Below are positions 7,752 to 41,525 of a DNA stretch of 64,000 nt, piece by piece. The stretch spans positions 7,006,001 through 7,070,000 of the forward strand of contig NC_047022.1 in the NCBI RefSeq assembly GCF_902652985.1, given 5' to 3'. Under the pieces are notes generated by a model that worked only from the letters and a program-made list of their open reading frames with translations, did not search any database and was not told where the DNA came from. How positions within the stretch are numbered: the first letter of the stretch is position 1; each line of letters opens with the position of its first letter. This stretch comes from Pecten maximus. Its lineage: Eukaryota. Position numbers and translations under genes: made by a program.

Positions 7752-8928
7752 CTTCATGATCACATACGGCCTGTACATTGATCGAGTGGTAGCCTTTCCG
7801 GTTGACAAAATTAGGTTCGTCCTTTGTTGGTGCTTGTATCCGAATGTGTGTACCATCAATACTTCCGACAACGCCTGGGAATCCACCATGCTGATAAAAC
7901 CCCTGTTGTATTTTCAATTTGTCTTGTCTGTTGACCGGCCATTTGATGAATTGTGGTATCAGTGAAGACAAAACTTCCGACACTTTGCGTATCACCCGCG
8001 ATACAGTAGATTTATCAGCCATAATTGTATCGCCAACAACCTGTTGGAATGTTCCCGTCGCATAGAAGCGCAGGGCTATCAGCACCTGAGAAAATGGGTA
8101 CGATGAATAAGAGCTAATTGTATCCAGAATACTAAAACCATTCTATAATAACTATAGACTGGAAAATAACCAAACAAACAAACAATATTTCATATAGAAC
8201 TAGCACAGCATGTTGTGTGTATTATATTCGATTTTCTTTTCGACTGTAAAATCCTACTGTCGCGAAAAAAAATTATAATAAAACATCTCACGTAGGTGGG
8301 CAAAGTCCGACTTATTCGTTCAAACGTACATTATAGTCTAACCAGAGACATATATAGAATTTATAGAAGTGACATAACCCCTGCTGACAGCGATCACAAT
8401 GTCAAGGATAGGTACATGTATATGTTATGCTACTGTACTAATCATTATGAATATAATAGAAACGAAAATTAAACACGATCAAGAATATAACACTATTTAC
8501 AATATATGCCACAATAGATTAATTCACCTTCTATATTAGATCGTTTTACTAATTGTTATAACCCCACATGTGCCCCTTGGGATCGAGTACGTCCTACGTC
8601 ATCAGATATGCGTTTTACAAAATTATGGGATGTCAATGCAAGTGTAAACAAACAGACAGTGGCTTTGAATGTACGTGGATTGTAAGTATTGTATGTTTAC
8701 CTGCATTTCCACCGATAGCGCGTTGCTTCTTTTTGTTGGATATTCAAGGCGATCTCTCACTATGCCAATAATAAATTCGATACCAGCTCTGCCAAACCTA
8801 TACCTCGCTCTAAGTTGGTCATCATTTAGGTCAGCTAACGGCGAAGACCGGTCGTAGTGAACTCGCGGTCGACGAACCCGGTTCCCTTCCTCTCCCAGAA
8901 TATCAAACAACAGATTCATCGCCATCAT
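7752..8928 (-). pseudogene. HARBI1-like Harbinger transposase, exons 8928-8701 and 8085-7752, later exons missing
   Basis: RYRF and ALSVEMQ|VLIALRFYATG joined by a phase-0 GT-AG intron. GFPGVVGSIDGTHI carries the first catalytic Asp; NRKGYHSINVQAVCD is followed by a GT donor at 7751. Confidence 0.88.
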
Positions 8929-9147
8929 TTAGCAGAACTATGCAGTTGAGGAGGTTTAATCTTGGTTTAATGGAGGCCTTAACCTTCATTAAAAATTGGG
9001 GAGTTAATCAAGCTTTAATCCTCATTTAAAGTTAATGAACGTTTGAGCAACGTCACATTTTCTGGAAATGACGTCAAAAAGTTAATGATGGATTAATGAA
9101 GCTTCAATCCTCGATTAACTTTTAATCAACCTTTGAACAACCGGTCC
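7752..9147 (-). mobile_element. Harbinger/PIF DNA transposon, 5' half only
   Basis: Terminus TTTGAACAACCGGTCC (9132-9147) followed by CAG target triplet, TTAA-rich subterminal palindromes 8955-9130, then the transposase exons. The other end was not found. Confidence 0.8.
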
Positions 9148-9206
9148 CAGGACATTGTCTTGGAGTGGCCCGTTGACCGCCTCCCGATTTCTGCCCCGAA
9201 CTACCT

Positions 9207-9691
9207 TTTATTTATTTATTTATTTATTTATGGGTTTTACGTCCGCTATTACGGCCTTACGGCCTTATAGCTGACGAGAACAGATGGGAAATTGAGTAGA
9301 GTGGGCACTGTATGGAGTGAAAGAAGAGAGTGGGAAAGAAGAGAAGGGAGTTGGTTGGAGAACTTATGGGTAATTTTTTAGACGACTCCCTGAGTCCGAA
9401 GGAGTTCTAACCTTGCACTGTTTAGTAGCATTTACGCCTACCCTATCGCAGAAGTGGAGAAGAGAGAGGACCCTACCCTATATATAAATTTGGTTTATCG
9501 AAGTTTTAACGTCCGTCTAATTAATACCTATTAAATGATATGAAAAATAAAGTATTGGCCTAAAAAAAACCTATCCTCTGGGCTGGCGTTATCACACCTA
9601 CTCTTCATCGAAAGACCGCAGAGGGATCTTTATCGTGCAAGTTGGACATTCTTACACGGGGCACCGTTTTAAGTCCTGTCCGACGGACTAG
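9207..9691 (-). mobile_element. 5'-truncated composite SINE (Deu/Nin-domain-like) with 12-bp TSD
   Basis: TSD CCCGAACTACCT at 9195-9206 and 9692-9703; the empty site is present in the inverted paralog near 13055-13072. Minus-strand (TAAA)n tail. Body contains GCACGATAAAGATCCC..GAAGAGTAGG. Confidence 0.8.
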
Positions 9692-10376
9692 CCCGAACTA
9701 CCTAATATGTGGTCCTTAAATACCAAAGATACACATGTCCAGTAGTCCACGTGGCATGGTGATATAAGCGTTTACATAATATTGTTAGATAATACATGAT
9801 AGCGCCGGGTATTTAATCTTATGCCCCTGGCACTTAACATGGTCAACAGACATCTGGTCAATATAAATTAGATAACCTAGCTTACTGCATGTCTGGTAAA
9901 TATCTGGCTGTCCGACTATACATATACACGCCAATATTTTTGTCTATTTAACTTAGCATTTTTGAAACAAAACATGTTTCGGTACAGGGGGGTTAAATAA
10001 ACGCATTAAGCCGTGAGTATTTATTACATGTTAAAGATCTTAAATCTAAAGCCCAAGGATAAGTTTGGACATGCCTTTATCTATGAAATGTGATCAGTGA
10101 TACTGCCAGTGACCTCCGGCCAATCAGCAGTATTGTTAAACTGGATTTACGTGTCATTGTGTCACAGTAACCACACTGAAACCTAGTCAGATCTACACTA
10201 GTTCTAGTACGAGGACAATTACACCACAACCGTACTACCAGGACGTCCTTCTTTTCCTTGTGTTCATTTAAAACATTTTAACATTGATAGAGGTAAGAAT
10301 GTTTTCATTGCTATCATTTACATTATATCCATTTATTATATATTATATGTTAAACTTGGTTGTCTGTCTTATTTGT

Positions 10377-10527
10377 TGGGTTGCGAGTTCGAAACCTACG
10401 TGGGGCAGTTGCCAGGTACTGACCGTAGGCCGGTGGTTTTTCTCCGGGTACTCCGGCTTTCCTCCACCTATAAAACCTGGCACGTCCTTAAATGACCCTG
10501 GCTGTTAATAGGCGGTTAAACAAAAAC
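10377..10527 (+). mobile_element. tRNA-derived SINE, family A, 5'-truncated
   Basis: Matches 21630-21770 from the B-box onward. Confidence 0.88.
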
Positions 10528-11800
10528 AGCTATTCTTTTTATCGGATTTAATAGATCGCCGAGCCTTTGCTCTCCAAATTTTAAAATTATTGTAATTTTC
10601 GACAGTTGGGGAAGTCAAAAATCGTCTTAGAGCTGCCTTTCGGCCGGATCTATTAATAAAAGATTCTTCAGATAAAAGAAACTTTGTAGGTTTTGGAACG
10701 GACTTTGGTATCGTTTTTTCGGCAATAGAAGTAAGAGTTTCGGTAAATGTTTTAATTGAATCATCGAGAATTTAAAATAAATTCGATATACATGTAGTAT
10801 GAGAGAGTATGTCACAAAAGTTATGTTTATTCTCAAAATGTTATACGATCACATATAGACATAGAAGCATGGAACAGTTACACAAATATAGTAGGTATAA
10901 ACAACAAAAAGTATCATAATGTTGTAAAAATGATCCCCCTCGGTCGATACTAAATTCGCCGAGGGCCTATTATGATTAATAAGGAAACATCTTTGGTAGT
11001 GTACAGATGCTAAAAGTAAATGAATGAATGAATGAACAAATAAATAAATAATATAACTTAAAGGTTTAACAGAAAAGCATCGCGGGTCGATTCGATGTGA
11101 TGACAGCGCGTGTTATGTCATGAATGTTTTTGTTATTGTTTTTTTCCCTCGATATGTACATTTCGTCCCGCAAAACTCGGCCCAAACAGCGGGTTGCAGT
11201 GACAATATCGGGTGGCCAATCCCATATTAAAATTAGTTCGTTTAAACGAAATGGAACCAATATTAAAACCATATAGATGTAATTGTGTAGAAAGGTAAAA
11301 TTTAGGCATTAGAAACCAAACAAAAAGGTGATCGAAAGATCCTATTATCGTGACGAAAACCGAATGTCAGGACGACTCGTCACAAACCGACAACATGTAC
11401 TCGCACAACTTATTCAGCCAATCAGCTGCTGTTTCATGTAAACCAAGTCCCTATAAGGAAAGTGTGTTTGTGGGGCCTGTAGGGGTTGGTTTGATTAATT
11501 AACATATGGAGTGGGTGCTTCCTATAAGCGAGAATATAGATTATAGGAATAAGGTTTGAAGAACAAACATATACATAGTCATATGATATTAGTACATATT
11601 TTTAAAATAAGATAAAAACATTCAAGAATGTTATTGCGTACACAATGTACATGTAGCATAAAAACTTCCACAGTATAACCAATATCCTATACTTGATTCG
11701 GTAAACTCGTTGATCCACTCTAATTGCAAATTGCTTGGCTTGATGTGTTCATTAATATGTTCAGAAGCAGTTTGTATAATTATACTAGTAGCCTGTTAAC

Positions 11801-12171
11801 CACCAGTTGTTCAAAAGTTGATTAGCTTAATCACTTAATTAGTGAAAATTTCATTTCTAATTTGTCGCATAACCACTGAGTATATCATCTTTGAATAATA
11901 CCAGTTGGAAGAGAATTACAAATTATAGAATTTCAAAAAGTTTTGTCAAGGAAGTTCTACCAGAAATTATTAGATCATGATTTGAAAAATGTTGTTAAAA
12001 AGTCCCTTGACACTGGTTCACATTTGGCCTTTTCTTGAGTTTTCGCCGTTAAGAGCAATGAGGAATGCTTTGGGTTCTATATCCTTGGCGAGACATACCA
12101 GAGTCTATAGATATATAAGTAGTTGCTATTTCTGCTTAAAGGTCAACATTTTAAGAGTGGGACGACCGGTG
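11801..12171. mobile_element. Non-autonomous Harbinger-like insertion
   Basis: Starts CACCAGTTGTTCAAAAG and ends GGACGACCGGTG (imperfect TIR). Absent from the paralogous site near 35911-35945. Confidence 0.6.
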
Positions 12172-25329: not shown

Positions 25330-26879
25330 AATATAAACTTTATTTTATTCATTCAATTCATACATATACAATACACAATCATACAATCATAATGTGAATA
25401 GGATTCGGAAACAAGTATAAGACTTATATTAATCCGTTTCCTTTTATGACACATTGAGTAAACGGCAGCAAGTGGGAGAATACGTAAGTGAGCAATGTAA
25501 TACTTGAATAAATGAAAAATGGGGAAATTCGGAAAAAGGAGAGATGAAAAGACCAGAAGAAAAAGATCAGAGAGGAATTTTATGCCATGACATGAGATAT
25601 ACAACCTGCTGTAGCAGCTGTGCAAACAATAAAGAATAAAAAATAAAAACAATCATTCAAATCTTTTAGAAATAATTATAAATTCTTGAACACTGGAAAA
25701 AATCAAAAGATTTTCATCATACGTGAGTTCGTTATCACCGAAGAGTAGTATTTCAGTTGATAAGGGATAGTTTAGAGCACTAAAACAACGTAAGCGAAAC
25801 TGTGCGAAAAGTGGACAACGTAATAAGAAATGTTCGTTGGTCTCATCTTCATGATTACACATGCATAGAGGACTATCTATAAGATTTTTATGAAATAGAT
25901 AAAATTTTAGTGGACTGCACTCCATCCTTAATCTTGCATGGTGAATCTGACCCAGTCTATTGCCGCTAAGGAAGTAATGTGGAACTTTGTGGCGTGGTTT
26001 ATTCAAATGACTTTTCAATTTAGTTATGGACGGATCACTTTTGATTGCATCTGGCAAGGAATTCCACAAAGGGATTACAGATGGCAGGAAGGATTTCATG
26101 TAAAGACTTGTGCGACAAGGAGGAGGGCGAAAGTTATTTCCAACACGAGTATTGTGATCATGGATGCTATTATTACGTCGAGGAAGAATTTCTTGTAGAT
26201 ACTGAGGAAGGAGACCGTGAACCATTTTATGGAAATGAATTATTTTGTGGTGTTTACGTCTTTGCTCTAAGGGAAGCCAGCCTGTTTCAAGATAAAGTTT
26301 TACTCTACTTGTGAGTTTAGTTCCGCCAGTAACTATACGCGCTGCCTCTAATTGGAGATTTTCTAGCATGTCAGACTGAGTTTTTGTAAGGTTATCCCAA
26401 ATAATGTTCCCATATTCAAAAATAGGTCGGATAAGAGTAAAATACAGAGTTTGAAGGGACGTACGATCTAAAGTGAATTTGAATCTGCGTAAAATATTCA
26501 ATTTTGGTGAAACCTTGGATATGATCAAGTTGATATGATCAGTCCAACCGCCATTGTTGGACAGAGTCAAACCGAGATGCCTATGTGAACTTACCTCAGA
26601 AAGCAAAATATTGTTCATATATAGAGGGGGATGAATTGGGGAAGTAGTCTTTTTGGATATTAATAAGGTTTCTGTTTTAGTAGGATTGAAGTTAACCAAC
26701 CAATTCACCGACCATTCATGAATTTTACGAAGATCGAAATTCAAATCGACTGCACTTATCCTAGGTGAGTCGATAATGACATACAAAGAGGTGTCATCTG
26801 CGAATAATTTTATATTAGCTCGTATGTCTTTCACAATGTCATTTATAAATAAAAGAAACAAAAGGGGGCCCAGTAGTAA
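25330..26879 (-). mobile_element. 5'-truncated CR1-clade LINE with 13-bp TSD
   Basis: TSD TTTTGGTAATTTT at 25317-25329 and 26880-26892; AATAAA near the 3' end. Confidence 0.92.
25653..26873 (-). pseudogene. C-terminal half of CR1 reverse transcriptase, open frame without a start
   Basis: LGPLLFLLFIND, KLFADD, FNPTKT, HRHLG, IRPIFEY, terminal CMC..EHFLLRC. Confidence 0.92.
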
Positions 26880-28295: not shown

Positions 28296-28985
28296 GATAA
28301 TCCAGTCCAAGACAGTGAATCAGTTCAAGAACCTAATGTTAGTAAAGTTAGTGAATCTAAAGAAGTAGACATATCAAACGATCTCAAAACCGACAAACAA
28401 CAAATAACTGATAATATTCAAGAAGGTTTAGAAAATAAAAGTCAACCATCAAATAAAAATCTGTCTCGGGTATGTTTAGCTAGATTAGTTTTAGAAAATA
28501 ATCAAAAAGCGTTCGTTGTATGTGGGAACAACAATTCTAAATATGCAGTTACATTATATCCAAAGGAAACTTGTCAATGTCCGTCTACTGGAACTTGTTA
28601 CCATATCATGGCTGCTAGAATGAAAATGGGGGATGGAATTGTAGACAGTAAAAGAACCGTTAGTTTAAAACAGTTATCTAAAAACAGTTTAAAAAGAAAC
28701 GATAAAAAATCAGGCAGAAAAAAACCAAGATGTAACGATTATGATAGGGATGTAATTGCGGCACCTGATTCGGTTACTCTTAATCAAGATAATGATACAA
28801 TAATGGTATATAGTACGCCACCTAAAACGCCAAAATCTACGAAAAAACTAGGTCCATCAAAAACTCCTATTCAACAAATAAAGACTCCTACAAATCAATC
28901 TATTAAAAAGGAAACTTTAAGTCCTGTAAAAAAAGGAAACCACGTGTTCCAAAAAGAAATTAAGATTTCAGTTAGAAGATTCTGA
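28296..28985 (+). pseudogene. SWIM zinc-finger fragment, probably a MULE transposase C-terminus
   Basis: The frame is open from 28296: AFVVCG..KYAVTLYPKETCQCPSTGTCYHIMAA (CxC-x5-CxH), then basic KKSGRKKPR. Confidence 0.72.
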
Positions 28986-29419
28986 TACATGTAATATTCC
29001 AAAATAACTAGTTATACGAAAAGATATACGAAAAAAATAAAATTATGATATAAGATGGTCGGTTTTATACATACGTGGTGCATAACAATAGTTTTCATGC
29101 ATGGAACATGTATGACCTGTTTATTTTTGCCATTTAAGTACCGTCATTTTGTCTCGCAAGTATTCGTAATGTTTTCGACGGCCTGGTGATACATCTACAT
29201 GTACAGTACATGTACCAGAATGGTAGACGGACATCACTACGATTATTTATCTTACTTAATACATAAATTACATATATTATGTATTTTTAAACACAGAAAT
29301 GTTTCTATTCAAAACAAGTCGTTTTATCTGTTGTTTAGTTCTACATGTATAGGGCGAATCGCGCGGCCATTTTGTGACGTCACTATTAGGGCGTGGCTTA
29401 ACACTGGTAGGCAAAAACA

Positions 29420-32128
29420 ATGGCGGACACAAAGATTACTACGAGGAAGATACCTGAAAGCGAAGGCGATATCGCATATTATATCGAGGATCAGCCACGC
29501 GAGGCAAGGCAGCGATATGAAACGAAGTTGACCTACGACAAGGGGCAGAAGTCTTTACCTAATCCGTACAGATTATCCTCGGGATGGGTAAACGACATAT
29601 CTACCTGGCCAGACCTAACTTACGGCGATATTTATAACTACCTGATCGACAGCCCAGGTGTATACACCAAGGAATCTATGAAAGCCTACAAATCGTTGGA
29701 CGCATACAGGTAGGCACAAAACCAATGAAATAATTAAATAGAAAAGTGATCTGATGTCGGAGTTTCGCTGTATTTAAACCGTCGATACATAATAAACATT
29801 TATCATTTACCTTTCGCGGGGAGAATTTGATTTGGTCACGTGACGACACACCTGGTTGATGTTTACCTTTGTGTAGAAAGGTGTCGATACAGTAACGTGC
29901 AGATTCTTAATCTGTGTCACTGTTTTAGATCGTTTCTGTTCCTGGATAACCCCATCGGTGCAGTCTTGTTGATTCACTTGCATAGTCTATGTGTTTTGTT
30001 TTACTGAGATTGTAACAAATGATCACTGATCTGTCCTCTAGGTATGTGCAGAGTGGACATGTCCAGGAAGTGTACTACCATCCTTTGGATGATAGGAACC
30101 TCTTCTGTTTCCTCAAGGCAAAGGTTGTTCCATCGCAGAGAGTGAATGATAAGCCTCACCAACCATGGATATGTGTCAACAAAGACAGTGGCAATATCTA
30201 TTGTGCACATTGCACATGCATGGCAGGGTAATTATAACTATATTATTTCAGTAACATCAAAGCTTCTGAAGATGAAGTATTTTTAAAATTTGCATAATTC
30301 CATTTTGTTCTAATTATATAAATTATTATCATAATAAATTAACATAAGTTAATATTTAGGGAGAGGAAACTACTTAAGTAGTTATGTTACTAATAGCTTC
30401 TGTACTTTTAATTATATTTGCTCCTGTTTGTTTTGAAAGACAATGTATAAAATTATTTACAATATTTGGTCTTTTTTTGCTTTAATCTATATTAATGTGA
30501 CATTACATTTCTCTTTCAGACTCGGAGAGGCCTGTAGCCATATTGCCGCACTCATGTTTAAAATACAGATTGCCGTTCACATGGGTTTGACAACCAAATC
30601 ATCAACTAGTGACATCTGTAAATGGAACAGCACATTTCGAAAGGAGGTAAATATCATCAATAATACTTTAGTCAGCCATTAACATGTTGGTAGTTCTAGA
30701 TCTTATTCCATGTGTGTGAAGTTAATGTCATGATGTATTGGTATTAAAATGAAATACATAGTAATGTTTGTAAAACATAATTAACTCTTTATTAAGTGAC
30801 AGTTAATGATCAAGAACAATATATGAATGCTGTGTAGTGTGAAATCTGTAGTAACACTATTTACTGGTATAAAGTTTCTGTTGACCCATGAGACTTGATT
30901 GAAAATATTGCAATGTGTACATTTTTCACTATTATTCCTGCAGATTGAGCCCAAGACAGTGTCCGAAATGCAGGGTATCCTAAAGGATGGAAATCGAACA
31001 CATCCTGTAGCAACTGTTCATGCAACAAGCAGGGACCCTTTACCCTCAGATGACATCATCAAAGCCCTCAAAGATGTGTGTCCAGGTGCCGTATTTTTCA
31101 CCACAATTCCACCTGTTGGTCCCCAAGAGACAGTCGAGAAGCCGAAAAAAACAGAAAAGGCTCCAGCCACAATCACATCTCTGTTCTGTACAGACAACAT
31201 CCCCAGTGATACAGATGGACTGAAGGACAAGTGCCAAGAGGTATGGACAAGTTATATTGTAACACATGACCCAGCTTCCTTTATTGAACAATCAACAAGG
31301 AACCAGAATGTGTGTAGCCGGTGGTTTGAACATAGGAAGGGCAGGATTACAGCCAGTAAAGCCCATGATGTGTTTGTGAGGAGAGACAGCACTAAGCCAG
31401 ACAATTTAGTACGGAGAATTGTTGGATATCAGTCCTACGATCTTTCGAAGACAAAATCTGTTTCGTGGGGATTGGACAATGAGGACACAGCTAGGGAGCA
31501 GTACAGGAAAGCCATGACATCTGTCCATTCGAACTTTGTTGTCAGAAAGTCTGGTCTCCTGATCGATTCCAATAGGCCGTATCTTTGAGCCTCATCAGAT
31601 GGTATCCGTGAATGTGCGTGCTGTGGCAAAGGAACTGTGGAAATAAAGTGCCCTTACAAACACAGGAAATCACAAATTGACCATGCAGCGAAATCTGACG
31701 GCACCTTTTGCCTTGATAAGGACCTGAAGCTCAAGCGTGGACATAAATATTATACTCAGGTACAACTGCAGATGTCTGTTCACCGGGTTCAGTTTTGTGA
31801 TTTCATAATATATTCAGAGAAGGACATGATAGTGAACATCATTCCATATGACACCGATTACTGTCAGAAAGTGCTAACAAAGTGCAACACATTTTTCATG
31901 GACCATATACTACCAGAGATCCTGACAAGACGTCTCTATAATTCTGAGTCATCCGCAGCAGACAAACTGGAGGAAGAGAACCTCTACTGTATATGCCAAG
32001 AACCAGCATACGGCAAGATGGTACAATGTTCAAATGCAGATTGTCCAAATGAATGGTTTCACTATGGATGCATGAACATTAGGAGGAAACCAAGAGGGGC
32101 TTGGTTCTGTCCAACTTGCAAGTTGTGA
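29420..32128 (+). pseudogene. SWIM + YqaJ (lambda-exonuclease-like) + PHD accessory protein; exons 29420-29709, 30042-30227, 30520-30646, 30944-32128; one nonsense codon
   Basis: GT-AG introns with matching phases 2, 2, 0. SWIM CTCMAGLGEACSH; YqaJ motifs WFEHRKGRITAS, PYL*ASSDG (TGA 31586-31588 where Gly is expected), VEIKCP, YYTQVQLQM; C4HC3 PHD at the C-terminus. Confidence 0.9.
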
Positions 32129-32300
32129 ACTTAATTATGTGATCGTTAAGTTGTGAACTATTTACTCCAGACTCGACAGGTGTGAACTTGTTGTGTGAAC
32201 ATTTAAGTTGTGGTGAACTCTACTCCAGCCTCGACAGGTGTGAACTTGTCATGTGAACATTTAAGTTGTGAACTTTATTTACTCCAGACTTGACAGGTTT
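32120..32300. repeat. About 58-bp tandem repeat, 3 copies, in the inter-gene 3' region of the transposon
   Basis: aagttgtgaact..actccagactcgacaggt recurs near 32148, 32205 and 32263. Confidence 0.8.
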
Positions 32301-32675
32301 ACAATAACCATGTCTTTGTCATTTGGATTCCCTTGAAATTAGAACACAAATTCAGTGATTATAAGCAAGTGATTTTTAATGTGTGATTATACATTTATAA
32401 ATTGAAACATGAATGATATCACTACAATTGCAATATGATTAAATAACTTGAACAGTCCAATCTCTTCGGTATTTTTTCCTCAGTTATATTGCACACAACT
32501 TATCAGATAATTGCAGTAAATTCACTGATACAAGCATCAACAGTACACACAACTGGGTGTAGGAATTCAAACAATTATCCATGTGTAAATAAATTATAAG
32601 TGTCAATAAATTAAAGTGAAAAACTTTTTCACTTTCTCACAGGATATACAATATGAAAATTATGCACATATTTTT

Positions 32676-34665
32676 TTATGTTACTAAACTTGGTTGCAAG
32701 TTACACAAAGCTGCACAGATTGTTACGACAGAGTCTACATGTGGAACTAAACTCATAGGCATAGGGCCACTAATGACCTTAAAGGTTTTTAAGCGTCCAA
32801 TGGCACGTTCGACATGTATCCTAACTCTAGCAATGGTGCGCGTTCTTTCAATGTCTTTCTGGCTCAGTTGGACCAGTCCACGGGTAAAGGCAGGGATGAC
32901 AAGTGTTGCACCTCTTGAAACAAGTTCTTCAGAAATCAAAAAACCACGGTCTGCTAAAACAACATCATTATAAGAAATCAAATCAAGAAATCCAGAACGC
33001 TGAGTGATTATCTTGTCTGAAGTTCTACCACCAAATACTCTGGACAAGTACGATATGGCACCACATGGGGTTATAGCAACTAAAAGCTTCAAAGTGTTAT
33101 TGTGTTTATAATTTGACCAAGTAGATGCTCTCGCTGTCAAATTTCCAGGGTGGTCAATGAAAATCTCGGTACAGTCTATGATGCATCGACTTCCTTTGAA
33201 ATGTTGTCTTACTATGTCAGGCATTGTTCTTATAATGTCATCTTTTTCTGGCCAGTGAATGAGAAATGCCAGTTTCGATGCCAGAACTGGTATTGTATTA
33301 TTCACAACATCTGAAATGACTGATTCTGAGCATCTAAAGCGGACTGCCAAGTCAAAGTTCAATGCATTCATCCTCAACTTCATCAAAATTATCATCAGAA
33401 CACTGGCAGAATCTAAACATTGCTTCTTTGGTAAAACAGACACAACATAGTTCAGTAACCACAGGAAACAAGCATATGATGGTAGCCCAGAATAGGAAGT
33501 TGTCCTGCTGTTATTATCTTTGAGAAGATTTGGTCCAAATGATATCTTATCCACTGATGCCCGTAAATCCTCATTCTCAGCTTGTAATCGTTGAAGCTCC
33601 TGCTGCATCTGACTATTCTGCCTCTGAAGTCGAGTTATTGTGTTGATGCAATGTGCATGAGGGTCTAGATCTGCAACAGGATCACACTGGTTCTTTGGCT
33701 CCGATGCGGAGAGTTCTAGCAATATGTTGGCAGCTAGGGAAGTATTCTCCTTGCTGGCAATCTCTTCCTCTCTCTTGCGGAGTCTGACATGTCTCTTGGA
33801 TCCTGGTGTTACTTGCCGTAAAGGTTCATATCCCATAGAAACAGAAGGGACATAGTCTGGATCAAGGGGGTCATTGCTCTTACCTGAAATAAGAAACATT
33901 TGTTATAGAAGTTGCAAAGAAAAAAATATACTCAATATAATTATATGAACATATAATATTCAAGCAGGTGCAACTATTATCTAATTTATAACAGGAGATA
34001 ACTACATTTCTATAAATACAGTATCTAAATTCTAAACAGTTTCAAAAAAGTTATGACTTATTGAAATGTGTGTGTTCAATGAAATAGGTGTCTATAATGA
34101 CTGTAAAAAAGGCCTCTTAAAAACTTAATTCACAATAAAGATTGAAAATCAAAACAATATGTTACAACAAACAATCTGCGTTATTGATCCCTTCATATGA
34201 ATCATTTTAATATAAGACTAGTGTAAGTAAGCTCGTCTGCTTACCGACTAGACTCCAGCCAAGAACTATTTGGTAAGTGTTAGATCTATGATGGGGAATC
34301 GTTTACAGTAGCCTATATAGGGGCGCTCAAAATGCTGTGTAAATTAACCATCAAAATGTTCCGTATAATGATGTAACTTTAAATTAACATTCTTCACATA
34401 CAGAACAAATACAACAGGAGTGTATATTGTATTGTCAGTTAGTTTAAACTATGGTTATTTTTAATCTACCGAAGAACGATTACACACCGTTGATAAAATG
34501 GCGACCGCAGACACGATGGCTGTCGTTTGGAGTCCAGTCTTTTCTTTTCAATGCCGCCAACCAAAGTCGTTTTCTCTCGGGTTTCTTTGGGAATCTGTAA
34601 AATGACAACTTTGTCCTTGCATCCCCTCTGCTAGTGCAATCGATGACACAGCAAGATGTCGGCAT
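32676..34665 (-). CDS. THAP + coiled coil + HTH + DDE (ISL2/DDE_Tnp_4-like) transposase, 461 aa, exons 34665-34488 and 33883-32676
   Basis: THAP MPTSCCVIDC..FYRFP..W..VCGRHF, phase-1 GT-AG intron, catalytic IIDCTE, LADRGF and IHVERAI. No stops. Confidence 0.92.
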
Positions 34666-36328
34666 AATCGCATTAATAGGTTCAGCATCTATCGACCCAT
34701 ATAATGTAAACAAGTAATGGCGGATAGCTTGGAGTACTCCAGTATTGCCTACCACTCAAAATCACGTGACTTTGTGACGTCATCGCGATTCGCCCTATAA
34801 ATAGCTTGTGTGTAATCTCGCCGAATACACATTTCTTCCACTCGCCAAGGCCTAGAGGTGTCCTCGACGACGTCCGAGCAAATTATATAAACGTTCTTAA
34901 ATAATAAAGTACATAACTTATTTAATTATACATCGGTATTTAGTTTCAATCCTAATAATTATTGCATATATTTCAACAAAAATATGGTAATTAGCTGCCT
35001 CGTAAAATGTTAATCGTTGTATATCTTTTACAATCGTTCCACACGTTTAAATACTTAGATGAGGCATTCCTCATTTTACATCTACCACGATACATATCGC
35101 ACATGTACCGTTCCAATCGCCCATCGTGCGCACATTTTCCTGCACGATCCGTATCGCATATATCGCACATCGTGCAGACATCGTGCGCACATCGCACAGC
35201 GTGGAACGTAGTGCGATCACATAACTGTATATTGTTGCAAGACTTCTATTTCTGTTTTTAAATCATTTCGATATAGTATGAGAAAGTATGTAACTAAAGT
35301 TATGTTTATTCTCAAAATGTTAATATTCCATTTAAAATGACAAATAAAAACATTCTAAGTAACGCAATTATTAAAACAATAGTCAATTTCAATCATGATG
35401 TTCATGTTAGATATAATAAACATCCAATTTCATATTGATTGTCAAACTTGACAAAATACTAGTATTATTGCTTTATTTTATCAAATAAATTATTATTCTT
35501 GCATGTCCAATATAGATTATATAATATACTTTTGAAATGTATTGTATGCAATATAATATTTATATGTATTTGAGTCTATGTTAATTTGTAGTTTTATATC
35601 ATAATGCTTATCCATCGATACATTGATACATTGATAAACAATTTAAAATAAATTGCATAAACCGTTATTCATAGTCAGATGATATTACTACATATTTTTA
35701 AAACTAGGATGAGTTCCTTATTTTAAAAAAAATCCAAGAATATTAATGCGTACATAATGTACATGTAACATCAAAATTTCCACAGTATAACCGATATCCT
35801 ACACGTGTAGCCCTGATTCAGTAAAGTCGTTGATCCACGCTTATTGCACATTGCCTGGCTTCATGTGTACTGTAACATCTTCAGTAGCAGTTTGTATAAT
35901 TACACTAGCAGCCTGTTAATAACCAGATCTACATGTACACGTGTAAGCTAATTTTCCAGTAATTAGATAAACAACAGTTATCTAAACTACGTGGATTATG
36001 TCTAAACGATATTCATGTAATACTGCCTGTACTTAATTATCTCCTTGTAGTGCCAATTAATGTGGTAATTACAAGTATACTTCAGGTCACGAGCCCCATG
36101 ACCATATTTAGTCGGGGGGAACTTATCTGTCGGGTCGATGCACATCTTAGTAGTATACAGGTACCATTTTCTGCTTGTATCATTGCCACTTCTAGCCGTA
36201 CATTGTGCGGATACAACACTGTTCACCTTCACCTGCACCACTAAACAGAAGAACATACAAGTTTGTCATTCTTCCACACTCAACAACTACAACAACATCT
36301 ACGACAGTGAGTTCACTTTATTTGCGCC

Positions 36329-39521: not shown

Positions 39522-41525
39522 ATGGACCTAATAAAGTACGATATATGTGGCAAAGGATTCGATCTGAAATCATATACTAACCGACATTTGGTTGCACTTA
39601 CCAACGAAAAACCTTACAAGTGCGATTTCTGTGATAAGAAATTTAAACTATTATCATTTCTCAAGAAACATGAAATCGGACATACTGGAGAAAAGACCCA
39701 CATATGCGATATCTGTGGTAAAGGATTTGGTCTTAAATCAGATCTCAGCCATCATCGGGTAGATCATATTGGTGAGAAACCTTACAAATGTGGTGTTTGT
39801 GGTAGGGGATTCGGTCGGAAATCAGCTCTGTACTTACATCGGAAGGCCCATACAAGAGAGAAACATTACAAATGCGATATTTGTGATAAAGAATATAGAC
39901 GATCATATGATCTAAAATATCACAAAATAACACATACTAGAGAAAAACCATTCACATGCGATATTTGTGGTGAAGGATTTCGTAGGAAATCTAATCTCTA
40001 CCGACATCGGACAACACATACCGGAGAGAAACCTTACAAATGCGATGTTTGTGGAAAGGGATTTAGTTACGTTTATTTACTAAAGCGACATAACATGACA
40101 CATACTGGAGAGAAACCAAATACTTGCGATGTTTGTGGTAAGAGATTTAGTCAGCCATTTTCCCTTAAACAACATTTGATAACACATACTAGAGATAACT
40201 CTTTACAATGGAATACTGATAGCAAAGGATTAGGCCAGAAAATAGGTCCAAAGGGACATAAGATAACCCAAAGCAGAGAAAAACTTCACAAATGTGATAT
40301 TTGTGGTAAGGCATTTAGTTACGTTTATTTACTCAAGAGCCATAAAATCGCACATACTGGAGAGAAACCTTACACATGTGATGTATGTGGAAAGGTATTC
40401 AGTGAGACAAGTTATTTAAGTCGACATCTGATAACTCATACTGGAGAGAAATCTTACAAATGTGATGTTTGTGGTAAGGCATTTCCTAACTCATATTTAC
40501 TTAAGCGACATCAAATAACACATACCGGAGAGAAACCCCACACATGTGATATTTGTGGTAAGGGATTTTTTCAGGCATCTCATCTTAAACGACATCGGGT
40601 TACACATACGGGAGAAAAACCTTATACTTGTGATGTTTGTGGTAAGGGATTCAGTCATGCATGCTATGTTAGTCAACATCGGAAGATACATACGGGAGAA
40701 AAACCTTATACTTGTGATGTTTGCGGTAAGGGATTTAGACGATCATATCATCTGAAAACACATAAAATAACACATACTGGAGAGAAACCTCACACATGCG
40801 ATATTTGTGGTAAGGGATTTTGTCAGGCATCTCATCTCAAACGACATCGGGTTACACATACGGGAGAAAAACCTTATACTTGTGATGTTTGTGGTAAGGG
40901 ATTTAGACGATCATATCATCTGAAAACACATAAAATAACACATACTGGAGAGAAACCCTACAAATGTGATATTTGCGGAAGTGGATTCGGTCAGACTTCA
41001 ACTCTTAACCGACATCGGATAGCACATGCCACACATAATTCTATCAAATGTGATGTCTGTGGTGAAGAATTCAGTCAACCATCAGCTTGTAAAAGACATA
41101 AAACAACACATACCGGGGGCATGTGTAATAAGGCAACTTATGACACGGCAGTTACAACGGATCAGATCAACTGTAGTGGTGATAAGGTTAAATCAGTGTC
41201 CCTACAACAAATTCCTTCAATATCACAAAACACTGCAAATTACACTAAACAAAACTTTGAAATGAGTGATGAAACTTGTGTTGAAGAACCTGTCAGTGTT
41301 TGTAAGACTACCTGTACTAGCGAGAAAATCGGCGTTATGGAGACTGTCAATATTAATGAGACTGTCAGTGCAAGCAAGAATGTCAGTGTAAGAGAGACAA
41401 CTAAAGTAAACGCTACTGCCATTTGCAGTATTGACACACGTGATAGCGGTACCACCAGTACTAGTGTTGCTGGGGCTTATGATGTAGGTACTGATATATA
41501 TGTAGGATACATACACGTACGATAG
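39522..41525 (+). CDS. C2H2 zinc-finger protein, 667 aa, 17 intact and 2 degenerate fingers; paralog of 14041-15672
   Basis: Tandem CxxC..HxxxH with HTGEKPY linkers. The C-terminus is shortened by a frameshift near 41503-41508; the ancestral stop is at about 41640. Confidence 0.92.
   Translation: MDLIKYDICGKGFDLKSYTNRHLVALTNEKPYKCDFCDKKFKLLSFLKKHEIGHTGEKTHICDICGKGFGLKSDLSHHRVDHIGEKPYKCGVCGRGFGRKSALYLHRKAHTREKHYKCDICDKEYRRSYDLKYHKITHTREKPFTCDICGEGFRRKSNLYRHRTTHTGEKPYKCDVCGKGFSYVYLLKRHNMTHTGEKPNTCDVCGKRFSQPFSLKQHLITHTRDNSLQWNTDSKGLGQKIGPKGHKITQSREKLHKCDICGKAFSYVYLLKSHKIAHTGEKPYTCDVCGKVFSETSYLSRHLITHTGEKSYKCDVCGKAFPNSYLLKRHQITHTGEKPHTCDICGKGFFQASHLKRHRVTHTGEKPYTCDVCGKGFSHACYVSQHRKIHTGEKPYTCDVCGKGFRRSYHLKTHKITHTGEKPHTCDICGKGFCQASHLKRHRVTHTGEKPYTCDVCGKGFRRSYHLKTHKITHTGEKPYKCDICGSGFGQTSTLNRHRIAHATHNSIKCDVCGEEFSQPSACKRHKTTHTGGMCNKATYDTAVTTDQINCSGDKVKSVSLQQIPSISQNTANYTKQNFEMSDETCVEEPVSVCKTTCTSEKIGVMETVNINETVSASKNVSVRETTKVNATAICSIDTRDSGTTSTSVAGAYDVGTDIYVGYIHVR

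What the first reader, a model, noticed from the sequence alone, without database searches (positions are those of the whole stretch)
29351..34796. Two-gene transposon with RAG-like logic: DDE transposase convergent with an exonuclease carrying an ING-type H3K4me3-reader PHD finger
Seen: an intact 461-aa THAP-DDE transposase lies tail-to-tail with a 4-exon SWIM-YqaJ-PHD gene inside perfect TIRs. The PHD ([41 protein letters not shown]) follows the ING pattern and keeps the Tyr, Met and Trp cage residues; the Asp after the third Cys is Ser. Known: ISL2EU elements encode a YqaJ protein whose role I do not know to be established; ING and RAG2 PHDs bind H3K4me3; ProtoRAG is also a convergent pair. 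Inference: a chromatin-guided transposition system in which the accessory protein reads active-promoter marks and resects or processes DNA ends. The element class is known; the mechanism is the open part.
Basis: partly seen in the sequence, partly recalled or inferred. Interest (0 to 1): 0.78.

Follow-up and report, generated by a model that had tools for sequence, protein, structure and literature searches.

The report
Scallop ISL2EU transposon with histone-reader nuclease
This is a young two-gene ISL2EU jumping gene in the king scallop whose helper protein joins a lambda-exonuclease-type nuclease to a histone-mark-reading PHD finger; the element class is known, but I found no paper describing this widely conserved reader module, and nothing yet shows that it steers where the element lands.

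Summary
Window 29351-34796 is a 5,446-bp ISL2EU (PHIS superfamily) DNA transposon of Pecten maximus. It has perfect 13-bp TIRs and a 2-bp target duplication, proven by empty sites for a sister copy.

It carries a 461-codon THAP-HTH-DDE transposase. Convergent with it is a 4-exon, 595-codon SWIM / lambda-exonuclease (YqaJ) / PHD gene. In this copy that gene is cut by a private TGA; two sister copies have G there, and RNA contigs from four runs carry their letter.

The PHD is ING-type: E 4e-19, and about 1 Å from ING-H3K4me3 structures in an AF2 model. The cage is kept: Tyr, Met and Trp here, and in 93-96% of 73 related proteins from cnidarians to fish. Every loss of the Trp coincides with loss of the first aromatic.

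The convergent gene pair recurs in four other molluscs, and in decayed form in a fish. So a histone-reading nuclease accessory protein is well supported.

Guided integration at promoters is not supported. Three of four datable scallop insertions sit inside other high-copy repeats, some lineages lack the PHD, and 'RAG-like' is analogy only.

The scan's first readers noted other two-gene ISL2EU elements elsewhere in this genome.

The parts
29349..29350 (.). Left copy of the 2-bp target-site duplication (AT)
   Evidence: The 2-bp duplication is proven by empty sites for the sister copy. Other copies carry GT, AT, AT.
29351..29363 (+). Left terminal inverted repeat AGGGCGAATCGCG
   Evidence: nine exact occurrences in the genome, seven of them at ends of this family.
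29375..29382 (.). Subterminal TGACGTCA palindrome (CRE-like), 12 bp inside the left TIR. A second AGGGCG lies at 29388.
   Evidence: Function inferred only: a promoter element or a transposase site.
29420..29709 (+). Accessory gene exon 1 (ATG at 29420)
   Evidence: 100% match to P0002 residues 1-96. Joint 29709|30042 in an RNA contig of run X2. 51% identity to Argopecten P0021.
30042..30227 (+). Accessory gene exon 2, holding the first half of the SWIM motif (CxC at 30211-30219)
   Evidence: H, C, C, C, H are invariant in alignment A2.
30520..30646 (+). Accessory gene exon 3, holding the second half of the SWIM motif (CxH at 30533-30541)
   Evidence: In the model of the full-length homologue, the N-terminal domain matches the ZSWIM8 SWIM region, Z 8.0.
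30944..32128 (+). Accessory gene exon 4: linker, YqaJ/lambda-exonuclease domain, PHD finger, stop at 32126-32128
   Evidence: Joint 30646|30944 in RNA contigs of X1 and X2.. AF2 model pLDDT 87.7.
31322..31780 (+). YqaJ / lambda-exonuclease-type PD-(D/E)xK nuclease domain. Catalytic Asp at 31598-31600, Glu at 31640-31642, Lys at 31646-31648.
   Evidence: Pfam E 1e-19 in the C16 copy. Asp and Lys invariant, Glu at least 90% across 52 relatives. Fold match to lambda exonuclease and LHK-Exo.
31586..31588 (+). In-frame TGA inside the nuclease domain. It is private to this copy and removes the E-x-K motif and the PHD from the product.
   Evidence: C16 and C3962 have G at 31586, as do contigs of four RNA runs.
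31985..32119 (+). ING-type PHD finger. Cage Tyr 31985-87, Ala 32006-08 (Ser in ING), Met 32018-20, Trp 32054-56. Arg2 pocket Ser 32030-32 (Asp in ING), Trp 32102-04.
   Evidence: Residue mapping through the 1x4i alignment and PMC5000080.
32129..32675 (.). 547-bp spacer between the two convergent stop codons. RNA contigs cover most of it.
   Evidence: contigs at 32100-32447 and 32501-32656.
32676..33883 (-). Transposase exon 2: coiled coil, HTH_Tnp_4 (33419-33270), DDE_Tnp_4 (33179-32700)
   Evidence: The D, D, E candidates are kept in Dreissena, Argopecten and Haliotis. RNA contigs cover 32561-33510.
34488..34665 (-). Transposase exon 1: THAP zinc finger (34653-34495), ATG at 34665
   Evidence: The intron 34487-33884 is inferred from GT..AG, reading frame and single THAP-HTH-DDE products in relatives. 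No RNA contig bridges it.
34775..34782 (.). Subterminal TGACGTCA palindrome next to the right TIR
34784..34796 (-). Right terminal inverted repeat (reverse complement of the left)
34797..34798 (.). Right copy of the 2-bp target-site duplication (AT)

Best explanation
Window 29351-34796 is a recently inserted, now decaying copy of a low-copy ISL2EU (PHIS superfamily) cut-and-paste transposon of Pecten maximus.

Shown: the family encodes a THAP-HTH-DDE transposase and, convergent with it, an accessory protein made of a SWIM zinc-finger domain, a lambda-exonuclease-type PD-(D/E)xK nuclease and a C-terminal PHD finger of the class that reads methylated H3K4. Sister copies with open frames are transcribed and spliced.

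Inferred mechanism: the transposase binds the ends through its THAP domain and makes the DDE cuts, with a 2-nt staggered target cut. The accessory protein docks on H3K4me2/3-marked nucleosomes through its PHD and resects 5' strands at transposase-made breaks. Resection would either free the non-transferred strand or push the emptied donor site into homology-directed repair, which would restore the element. On this reading the PHD gates or stimulates the reaction in open, transcribed chromatin, as H3K4me3 binding does for RAG2. It does not pick promoters as landing sites.

My odds: PHD binds methylated H3K4, about 0.75; nuclease is active, about 0.8; accessory protein is needed for or boosts transposition, about 0.6; the specific gating-plus-resection role, about 0.4.
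For: Identity: Pfam domains; TIRs, 2-bp duplication and empty sites; agreement with the published ISL2EU description (PMC4482050, PMC4122938).

PHD: all top PDB sequence hits are ING/Yng/Pho23 PHDs, E 4e-19 to 3e-13, against 4e-7 for the next class. The AF2 model superposes on ING2/4/5-H3K4me3 complexes at 0.8-1.2 Å over 46-50 residues. Cage conservation across 73 proteins, from Hydra and Priapulus to molluscs and fish: aromatic 93%, Met 96%, Trp 96%, second Trp 97%. All three losses of the Trp fall among the five sequences that lack the first aromatic (hand-computed hypergeometric p about 1.6e-4). The second clade's PHD is nearest TAF3, ING, CFP1, Spp1 and BPTF, all H3K4me3 readers.

Nuclease: Asp and Lys invariant, Glu at least 90%; Z 18 to LHK-Exo and lambda exonuclease.

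Linkage: the same convergent pair occurs in Dreissena, Haliotis, Argopecten and Mytilus, and in decayed form in a pipefish.

Expression: spliced RNA contigs in two studies, carrying the letters of the C16-type copy.
Against: No activity was measured: histone binding, nuclease action and any role in transposition are all inferred from sequence and fold. The ING cage Ser is Ala here and Glu/Asp in 36 of 43 close relatives, so the methylation state read is uncertain. The Arg2-pocket Asp is Ser here. Some ISL2EU lineages have no PHD (goldfish P0096, P0063-65), so the PHD is not essential to the class. Lambda-type exonucleases need a DNA end; how that fits DDE chemistry is unknown. Nothing shows contact between the two proteins. 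The window copy itself cannot make the PHD or a whole nuclease.
Confidence: 0.5

Rival explanations
1. One reading: the PHD steers integration to H3K4me3-marked active promoters, so new copies land near transcription start sites.
For: The PHD is of a class that localises ING2, ING4 and RAG2 to start sites (PMC5000080, PMC8355894). Two of five loci in other species lie within about 1.7 kb of a called gene's 5' end.
Against: Three of four datable insertions of this family lie inside other high-copy interspersed repeats and the fourth lies 228 bp from one. With 27% of the genome repetitive (PMC7191990), P(3 or more of 4) is about 0.06 by hand. Three of five loci in other species have no called gene within 10 kb. 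CpG observed/expected in the flanks is unremarkable. Caveat: fixed insertions are filtered by selection, and n is tiny.
Confidence: 0.2
2. The PHD does not act in the DNA reaction. It either binds a non-histone partner or acts as a free-standing ING-PHD mimic that competes with host ING proteins for H3K4me3 and blunts the DNA-damage response to transposase-made breaks.
For: The protein has the ING PHD but no ING N-terminal domain. ING3 PHD binding to H3K4me3 is needed for damage-dependent cell death (PMC5000080). Some PHD-like fingers bind other ligands (my own knowledge).
Against: The PHD is always fused to the nuclease rather than encoded alone. The second clade's PHD is not ING-spaced yet keeps the cage, which fits histone reading in general rather than mimicry of ING specifically.
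Confidence: 0.08
3. The accessory gene is a passenger: a captured host or viral gene with no role in transposition.
For: No functional data exist for any ISL2EU second ORF (PMC4482050). A fish copy keeps the accessory frame while its transposase has decayed.
Against: The same three-domain protein sits in the same convergent position beside the same type of transposase in four other mollusc genera and a fish, with catalytic and cage residues conserved at 30-47% overall identity. That is not expected of a passenger.
Confidence: 0.03

Closest known systems
[quoted passage not shown] 2014, PMC4122938; PMC4482050)
   Same: THAP-HTH-DDE_Tnp_4 transposase, a second ORF with a YqaJ exonuclease domain, a 2-bp duplication that is usually AT, short TIRs, animal hosts. 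This element is a member.
   Different: The papers I could read describe the second ORF only as a YqaJ or DNA-binding protein of unknown function. None mentions the SWIM domain or the C-terminal PHD. The TIR here starts AGGG rather than the 'usually GG' reported.
RAG1/RAG2 and ProtoRAG/RAG-like transposons
   Same: Two convergent genes inside TIRs. An accessory protein that carries a PHD of the methyl-H3K4-reading class. The PHD is dispensable in some lineages: amphioxus ProtoRAG lacks it, and sea-urchin RAG2L reads H3K4me2 (PMC8355894).
   Different: No homology. The transposase here is IS5/Harbinger-type, not Transib/RAG1. The accessory protein is a SWIM plus lambda-exonuclease nuclease, not a kelch propeller. 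The duplication is 2 bp, not 5 bp. The resemblance is one of layout.
ING1-5 / Yng / Pho23 PHD fingers
   Same: Same zinc-ligand spacing, 50-60% identity over about 48 residues, cage Tyr, Met and Trp and the Arg2-pocket Trp kept, about 1 Å superposition of the model.
   Different: No ING N-terminal domain. Cage Ser is Ala here (Glu/Asp in most relatives). Arg2-pocket Asp is Ser here. The finger is fused to a nuclease inside a transposon.
Lambda exonuclease / LHK-Exo / herpesvirus alkaline nuclease (YqaJ, PD-(D/E)xK)
   Same: Fold (Z 18.0-18.4) and the catalytic Asp, Glu-x-Lys.
   Different: Embedded between a SWIM domain and a PHD. No Red-beta-like annealing partner is encoded. Oligomeric state and substrate are unknown.
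Tn7 TnsA/TnsB and PIF/Harbinger Myb-like ORF (analogies of logic; my own knowledge for Tn7)
   Same: A DDE transposase paired with a second element-encoded protein: a PD-(D/E)xK nuclease in Tn7, an accessory protein with a Myb/SANT DNA-binding domain in Harbinger (PMC4122938).
   Different: TnsA is an endonuclease of a different subfamily in bacteria. The Harbinger partner has no nuclease and no histone reader.
Fungal DNA transposons that encode TET/JBP dioxygenases (PMC12730594)
   Same: A cut-and-paste element, including PHIS relatives, that carries a chromatin or epigenetic module beside its transposase.
   Different: That module is an enzyme acting on DNA methylation in fungi. This one is a histone-mark reader fused to a nuclease in animals.

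Membership tests
ISL2EU (PHIS superfamily) | DDE_Tnp_4 (IS5/Harbinger-type) transposase with HTH and an N-terminal THAP domain | tested here: met
   DDE_Tnp_4 E 3e-45 over the full profile, HTH_Tnp_4 E 1.5e-10, THAP E 2e-14. D, D, E kept in relatives.
ISL2EU (PHIS superfamily) | Second ORF encoding a YqaJ exonuclease-domain protein | tested here: met
   (E 1e-19).
ISL2EU (PHIS superfamily) | 2-bp target-site duplication, typically AT | tested here: met
   AT, GT, AT, AT in four copies. Empty sites prove the 2 bp. The window copy fits paralogous empty sites to within 1 bp.
ISL2EU (PHIS superfamily) | TIRs of 6-259 bp, 'usually' beginning GG (PMC4482050) | tested here: inconclusive
   13-bp perfect TIR. 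The empty sites place the A inside the element, so the TIR starts AGGG, with GG at positions 2-3.
H3K4me3-reading PHD finger, ING type | Cys4-His-Cys3 ligands with ING spacing (4 residues between Cys3 and Cys4, 5 between Cys4 and His) | tested here: met
   54 of 73 family PHDs have this spacing.
H3K4me3-reading PHD finger, ING type | Cage residues Tyr, Ser, Met, Trp (ING3 Tyr-8, Ser-15, Met-19, Trp-31; PMC5000080) | tested here: inconclusive
   Tyr, Met and Trp kept; Ser is Ala here. In the family: aromatic 68/73, Met 70/73, Trp 70/73. The Ser position is Glu/Asp in 36/43.
H3K4me3-reading PHD finger, ING type | Arg2 pocket (ING3 Cys-22, Asp-23, Trp-47) | tested here: inconclusive
   Cys and Trp kept; Asp is Ser here. 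Asp in 49/73 and Trp in 71/73 of the family.
H3K4me3-reading PHD finger, ING type | Measured preference for methylated H3K4 peptide | not testable with these tools
   Needs ITC, a peptide array or NMR. No complex modelling is available here.
ING protein family | N-terminal ING / leucine-zipper-like domain that joins HAT or HDAC complexes | tested here: not met
   No such Pfam hit in this protein or in seven full-length relatives. Not an ING protein, despite the database name 'ING4-like' for the Mya relatives.
Lambda exonuclease / YqaJ PD-(D/E)xK nucleases | Fold and the catalytic Asp ... Glu-x-Lys | tested here: met
   Z 18.4 to 3syy and 18.0 to 3slp. Asp and Lys invariant, Glu at least 90%. 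In the window copy the TGA lies just upstream of all three catalytic residues.
SWIM zinc finger | CxCxnCxH motif in a small alpha/beta domain | tested here: met
   C-T-C-x7-C-S-H across the exon 2/3 junction, invariant in 28 relatives. The model of homologue P0021, residues 61-177, matches ZSWIM8 at Z 8.0, rmsd 2.9 Å. Pfam SWIM itself gave no hit.
RAG / ProtoRAG (Transib-derived) transposons | RAG1/Transib-type DDE core and a RAG2 kelch propeller | tested here: not met
   The transposase is DDE_Tnp_4. The accessory protein is a nuclease fold. Only the convergent layout and a PHD on the accessory protein are shared.

The most novel reading that the evidence does not exclude
ISL2EU accessory proteins are an old (cnidarian to vertebrate), widespread class of transposon-encoded readers of methylated H3K4 fused to a lambda-type exonuclease. 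They couple cut-and-paste transposition or the repair of its breaks to active chromatin. That would be an independent, non-homologous counterpart of the RAG2 PHD, and the first histone-mark reader I know of on the accessory protein of an active cut-and-paste transposon outside the RAG lineage. The Glu/Asp at the fourth cage position in most members would then tune reading towards H3K4me2, as the engineered BPTF Y17E does.
Probability: 0.35. Interest if true: 0.78.

Novelty: new member of a known kind. Interest (0 to 1): 0.6.

Why it matters
The role of the second ORF of ISL2EU elements is stated to be unknown (PMC4482050). This work shows that it is a conserved three-domain protein whose last domain has the sequence, the modelled fold and the cage residues of a methyl-H3K4 reader. 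That turns an open question into specific bench tests.

If the PHD gates or guides the reaction, ISL2EU would be a second, independent case of a transposase system wired to H3K4 methylation. That bears on how RAG2-type control could arise, and it could give a chromatin-aware gene-transfer tool, alongside the related Spy elements already developed as tools (PMC11304231, title and abstract only).

The scallop family is a practical starting point. It is young, low in copy number and transcribed, and sister copies have both frames open.

Tried and rejected
1. Host exon next to the insertion. The 125-aa ORF at 28608-28985 looked like a first exon and would have put the element near a start site. 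Rejected: 28300-28998 is a repeat with at least 25 copies.

2. CpG observed/expected in 1-kb flanks of four copies as a proxy for unmethylated promoters. Values of 0.64-1.69 against a local median of 0.93; uninformative.

3. Distance to called genes in other species. Five loci only, with a mixed result. Too few, and the gene models are partly chimeric with the element.

4. Looking up the window's own annotated protein for its neighbours. That record is withheld.

5. TIR pattern count to find many non-autonomous copies for a site-preference test. Only nine exact hits, seven already known, so the family is too small.

6. Literature. No paper in the library links YqaJ or ISL2EU with a PHD or SWIM domain. 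Subscription journals and Repbase Reports were not searchable, so absence is not proven.

7. A TA duplication with a TIR starting GGGCG. Rejected by the C16 empty sites.

Exons were searched by reference one at a time. The full-length fold was taken from the natural homologue P0021.

9. The large representative-protein search and the third word search were not used, because the family scans had already settled the proteins.

10. The transposase intron was not bridged by any RNA contig, and intron 2 of the accessory gene rests on the NCBI model and homology only.


Full report
WHAT IS THERE. The assembly behind the window has 918,306,378 bases in 3,983 contigs. Those are exactly the figures published for the Pecten maximus genome (PMC7191990). 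An NCBI protein of that species matches the window exon by exon at 100%.

Window 29351-34796 is bounded by AGGGCGAATCGCG and its exact reverse complement. A whole-genome search finds a 99.7%-identical full copy on C16. It also finds a full copy on C3962 with a 1,490-bp insertion, internally deleted copies on C14, C17 and C13, and a 72%-identical relic on C10. The 13-mer occurs only nine times in the genome, seven of them at these ends.

Flanking dinucleotides are AT (window), GT (C16), AT (C3962) and AT (C17). The C16 copy sits in a high-copy repeat. Three uninterrupted paralogues of that repeat read ...gcaGTttcc... where the filled site reads ...gcaGT[element]GTttcc.... The window copy also sits in a repeat. 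Its paralogous empty sites fit to within one T, which I put down to the 7% divergence of those paralogues.

GENES. Minus strand: a 59-codon THAP exon (34665-34488), a 604-bp GT..AG intron, and an exon (33883-32676) with a coiled coil, HTH_Tnp_4 and a full-length DDE_Tnp_4 match. That makes 461 codons in all. The intron is not bridged by RNA contigs. It rests on the reading frame and on single THAP-HTH-DDE products of 468 and 485 residues in Argopecten and Dreissena.

Plus strand: four exons totalling 595 codons. RNA contigs carry the joints 29709|30042 and 30646|30944. NCBI's model LOC117332976 uses all four exons and stops at the in-frame TGA at 31586-88. Full-length relatives of 590-602 residues align without a break across all four exons.

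The TGA is private to this copy: C16 and C3962 have G there. All four RNA runs that I laid also carry G, together with the other letters of the C16-type copy. The window copy also has four private missense changes in the transposase. One replaces an Arg that is kept in all four relatives compared, counting the C16 sister copy, seven residues after the first catalytic Asp. So this copy is a decaying member of a family that is still transcribed.

THE ACCESSORY PROTEIN. In the unbroken C16 copy, exon 4 scores YqaJ at E 1e-19 and also carries a PHD. An AlphaFold2 model of exon 4 (pLDDT 87.7) matches lambda exonuclease and LHK-Exo. Its last 50 residues match ING2, ING4 and ING5 PHDs solved with H3K4me3 peptides, at 0.8-1.2 Å. 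A model of the full-length Argopecten homologue gives Z 18.4 and 18.0 for the nuclease. It also matches residues 61-177 to the SWIM region of ZSWIM8, at Z 8.0. The CxCx7CxH motif straddles the exon 2/3 junction and is invariant in 28 relatives. The catalytic Asp and Lys are invariant, and the Glu is at least 90% conserved, in 52 relatives.

THE PHD. By sequence, the twenty best solved structures are all ING, Yng or Pho23 PHDs (E 4e-19 to 3e-13). The next class, Spp1, is at 4e-7. I mapped residues through the gapless alignment to 1x4i onto the ING3 study (PMC5000080):
- Cage Tyr-8, Met-19 and Trp-31 are kept.
- Cage Ser-15 is Ala.
- Arg2-pocket Cys-22 and Trp-47 are kept.
- Arg2-pocket Asp-23 is Ser.

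Two word-index searches gave 107 relatives. They come from bivalves, gastropods, a priapulid, Hydra, a stomatopod, a frog and several fishes. Of these, 73 carry a recognisable C-terminal PHD. Most of the rest look like fragments or broken gene models, and a few lineages end cleanly without a PHD: goldfish P0096 and P0063-65.

Across the 73 PHDs, conservation is high:
- Residue before Cys1 is aromatic in 68.
- The Met is present in 70.
- The cage Trp is present in 70.
- The second Trp is present in 71.
- The Arg2-pocket Asp is present in 49.

All three sequences that lost the cage Trp are among the five that lack the first aromatic. Under a hypergeometric model the probability is 10/62,196, about 1.6e-4 (my hand computation, which ignores shared ancestry). 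That is what one expects if the two residues work as one unit.

Fifteen proteins, including those of Hydra and Priapulus and other scallop families, have ordinary PHD spacing (CDxCxxWFH) instead of ING spacing, yet keep the same triad. Their nearest solved relatives are TAF3, ING, CFP1, Spp1 and BPTF, all H3K4me3 readers.

In 36 of 43 ING-spaced relatives the fourth cage position is Glu or Asp. By residue count this is the position of BPTF Tyr-17, and the Y17E variant of BPTF prefers Kme2 over Kme3 (PMC4589357). The state that is read may therefore be me2, or me2 and me3. The equivalence of positions is my inference.

LINKAGE. The accessory gene is followed by a convergent THAP-HTH-DDE gene in four other molluscs:
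- Dreissena polymorpha
- Haliotis cracherodii
- Argopecten irradians
- Mytilus edulis

In a pipefish the accessory frame is open but only remnants of the transposase remain. This fits the published two-ORF description of ISL2EU, in which the function of the second ORF is called unknown (PMC4482050, PMC4122938, PMC9179366). None of these papers, nor any other in the library, mentions a PHD or SWIM domain in it.

DOES IT TARGET PROMOTERS? This could be tested only weakly, and the result does not help the idea. The window, C16 and C3962 insertions lie inside other interspersed repeats that each have 40 or more near-identical copies. The C17 insertion lies 228 bp from one. With 27% of the genome repetitive, three or more of four has a probability of about 0.06 (hand computation).

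In other species, two loci are within about 1.7 kb of a gene's 5' end and three have no called gene within 10 kb. Flank CpG content says nothing. Old insertions are filtered by selection, so this does not refute targeting. But nothing here supports it.

HOW IT MOST LIKELY WORKS. Shown: the domains, their conserved active and cage residues, the conserved pairing with the transposase, and transcription with splicing.

Inferred: the THAP-DDE transposase binds and cuts the ends, and the accessory protein is brought to H3K4me2/3 nucleosomes by its PHD. There it resects 5' strands at the breaks. I favour a gating or repair role over site choice, because of the insertion sites and because RAG2's PHD also acts by stimulating catalysis in marked chromatin (PMC8355894). 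A Tn7-like split of labour, with the DDE protein handling the 3' ends and a PD-(D/E)xK protein the 5' ends, is a further analogy from my own knowledge.

The RAG comparison is one of layout only. Neither protein is homologous to its RAG counterpart. In both systems some lineages do without the PHD.

VERDICT. The element is an ordinary member of a known class. The reading 'accessory protein = histone-reading nuclease' is well supported, and I found it in no paper I could search. 'Chromatin-guided integration at promoters' is unproven and mildly disfavoured.

The scan's first readers noted two other two-gene ISL2EU elements on other pieces of this genome; I did not examine them. The joined spliced protein was not sent to any tool.

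Noticed in passing
window 28993-29350 and 34797-35232: The element is nested in another interspersed repeat of about 790 bp, with 40 or more copies at 87-94% identity. Uninterrupted copies serve as paralogous empty sites. A different repeat with 25 or more copies covers 28300-28998 and contains the 125-aa ORF at 28608-28985.
   Followed up: partly
window 29375-29382 and 34775-34782; 29388-29393: A TGACGTCA (CRE-like) palindrome sits just inside each TIR, upstream of each gene's ATG (45 bp and about 110 bp). A second AGGGCG lies 37 bp inside the left end. These may be promoter elements or transposase sites.
   Followed up: no
window 32129-32675: The two convergent genes end 547 bp apart, and RNA contigs cover most of the spacer. 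The transcripts may overlap and form double-stranded RNA. Contigs cannot show the strand.
   Followed up: no
G000:C3962:58503-65446 (L003/L004): The third full copy carries a 1,490-bp insertion after window-equivalent position 34057, inside the transposase intron. It also has a 3-bp in-frame deletion at 33522-24 and an 8-bp intron deletion.
   Followed up: partly
L002 flanks (G000:C16:10427011-10427114 and 10432575-10433214): The C16 copy is inserted in a very young repeat of about 745 bp, with many copies at 96-100% identity across all chromosomes. This looks like a recently active non-autonomous element.
   Followed up: no
window 39522-41525 (+): A 667-aa single-exon ORF with many tandem C2H2 zinc fingers (Pfam E 2e-114).
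   Followed up: partly
window 25653-26861 (-): A 402-aa ORF whose sequence looks like the C-terminal part of a LINE reverse transcriptase (FADDT motif). No Pfam hit at E 0.001.
   Followed up: partly
proteins P0096, P0063-P0065: Some ISL2EU accessory proteins (goldfish, and several from metagenome or ENA assemblies) end right after the nuclease, with no PHD. They form a natural comparison group for any test of what the PHD does.
   Followed up: partly
L021 (Syngnathoides biaculeatus, 8001-12000): In this fish the 594-aa accessory frame is open, while the adjacent transposase survives only as fragments. This could be decay in progress or a step towards host use of the accessory gene.
   Followed up: no
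run X9 on window 29351-30030 and 31253-33346: One run carries a more divergent variant (95-99% identical, many changed letters, a 50-bp skip at 33369-33420) and an unspliced contig across intron 1. This is another copy or allele, or DNA in the library.
   Followed up: no
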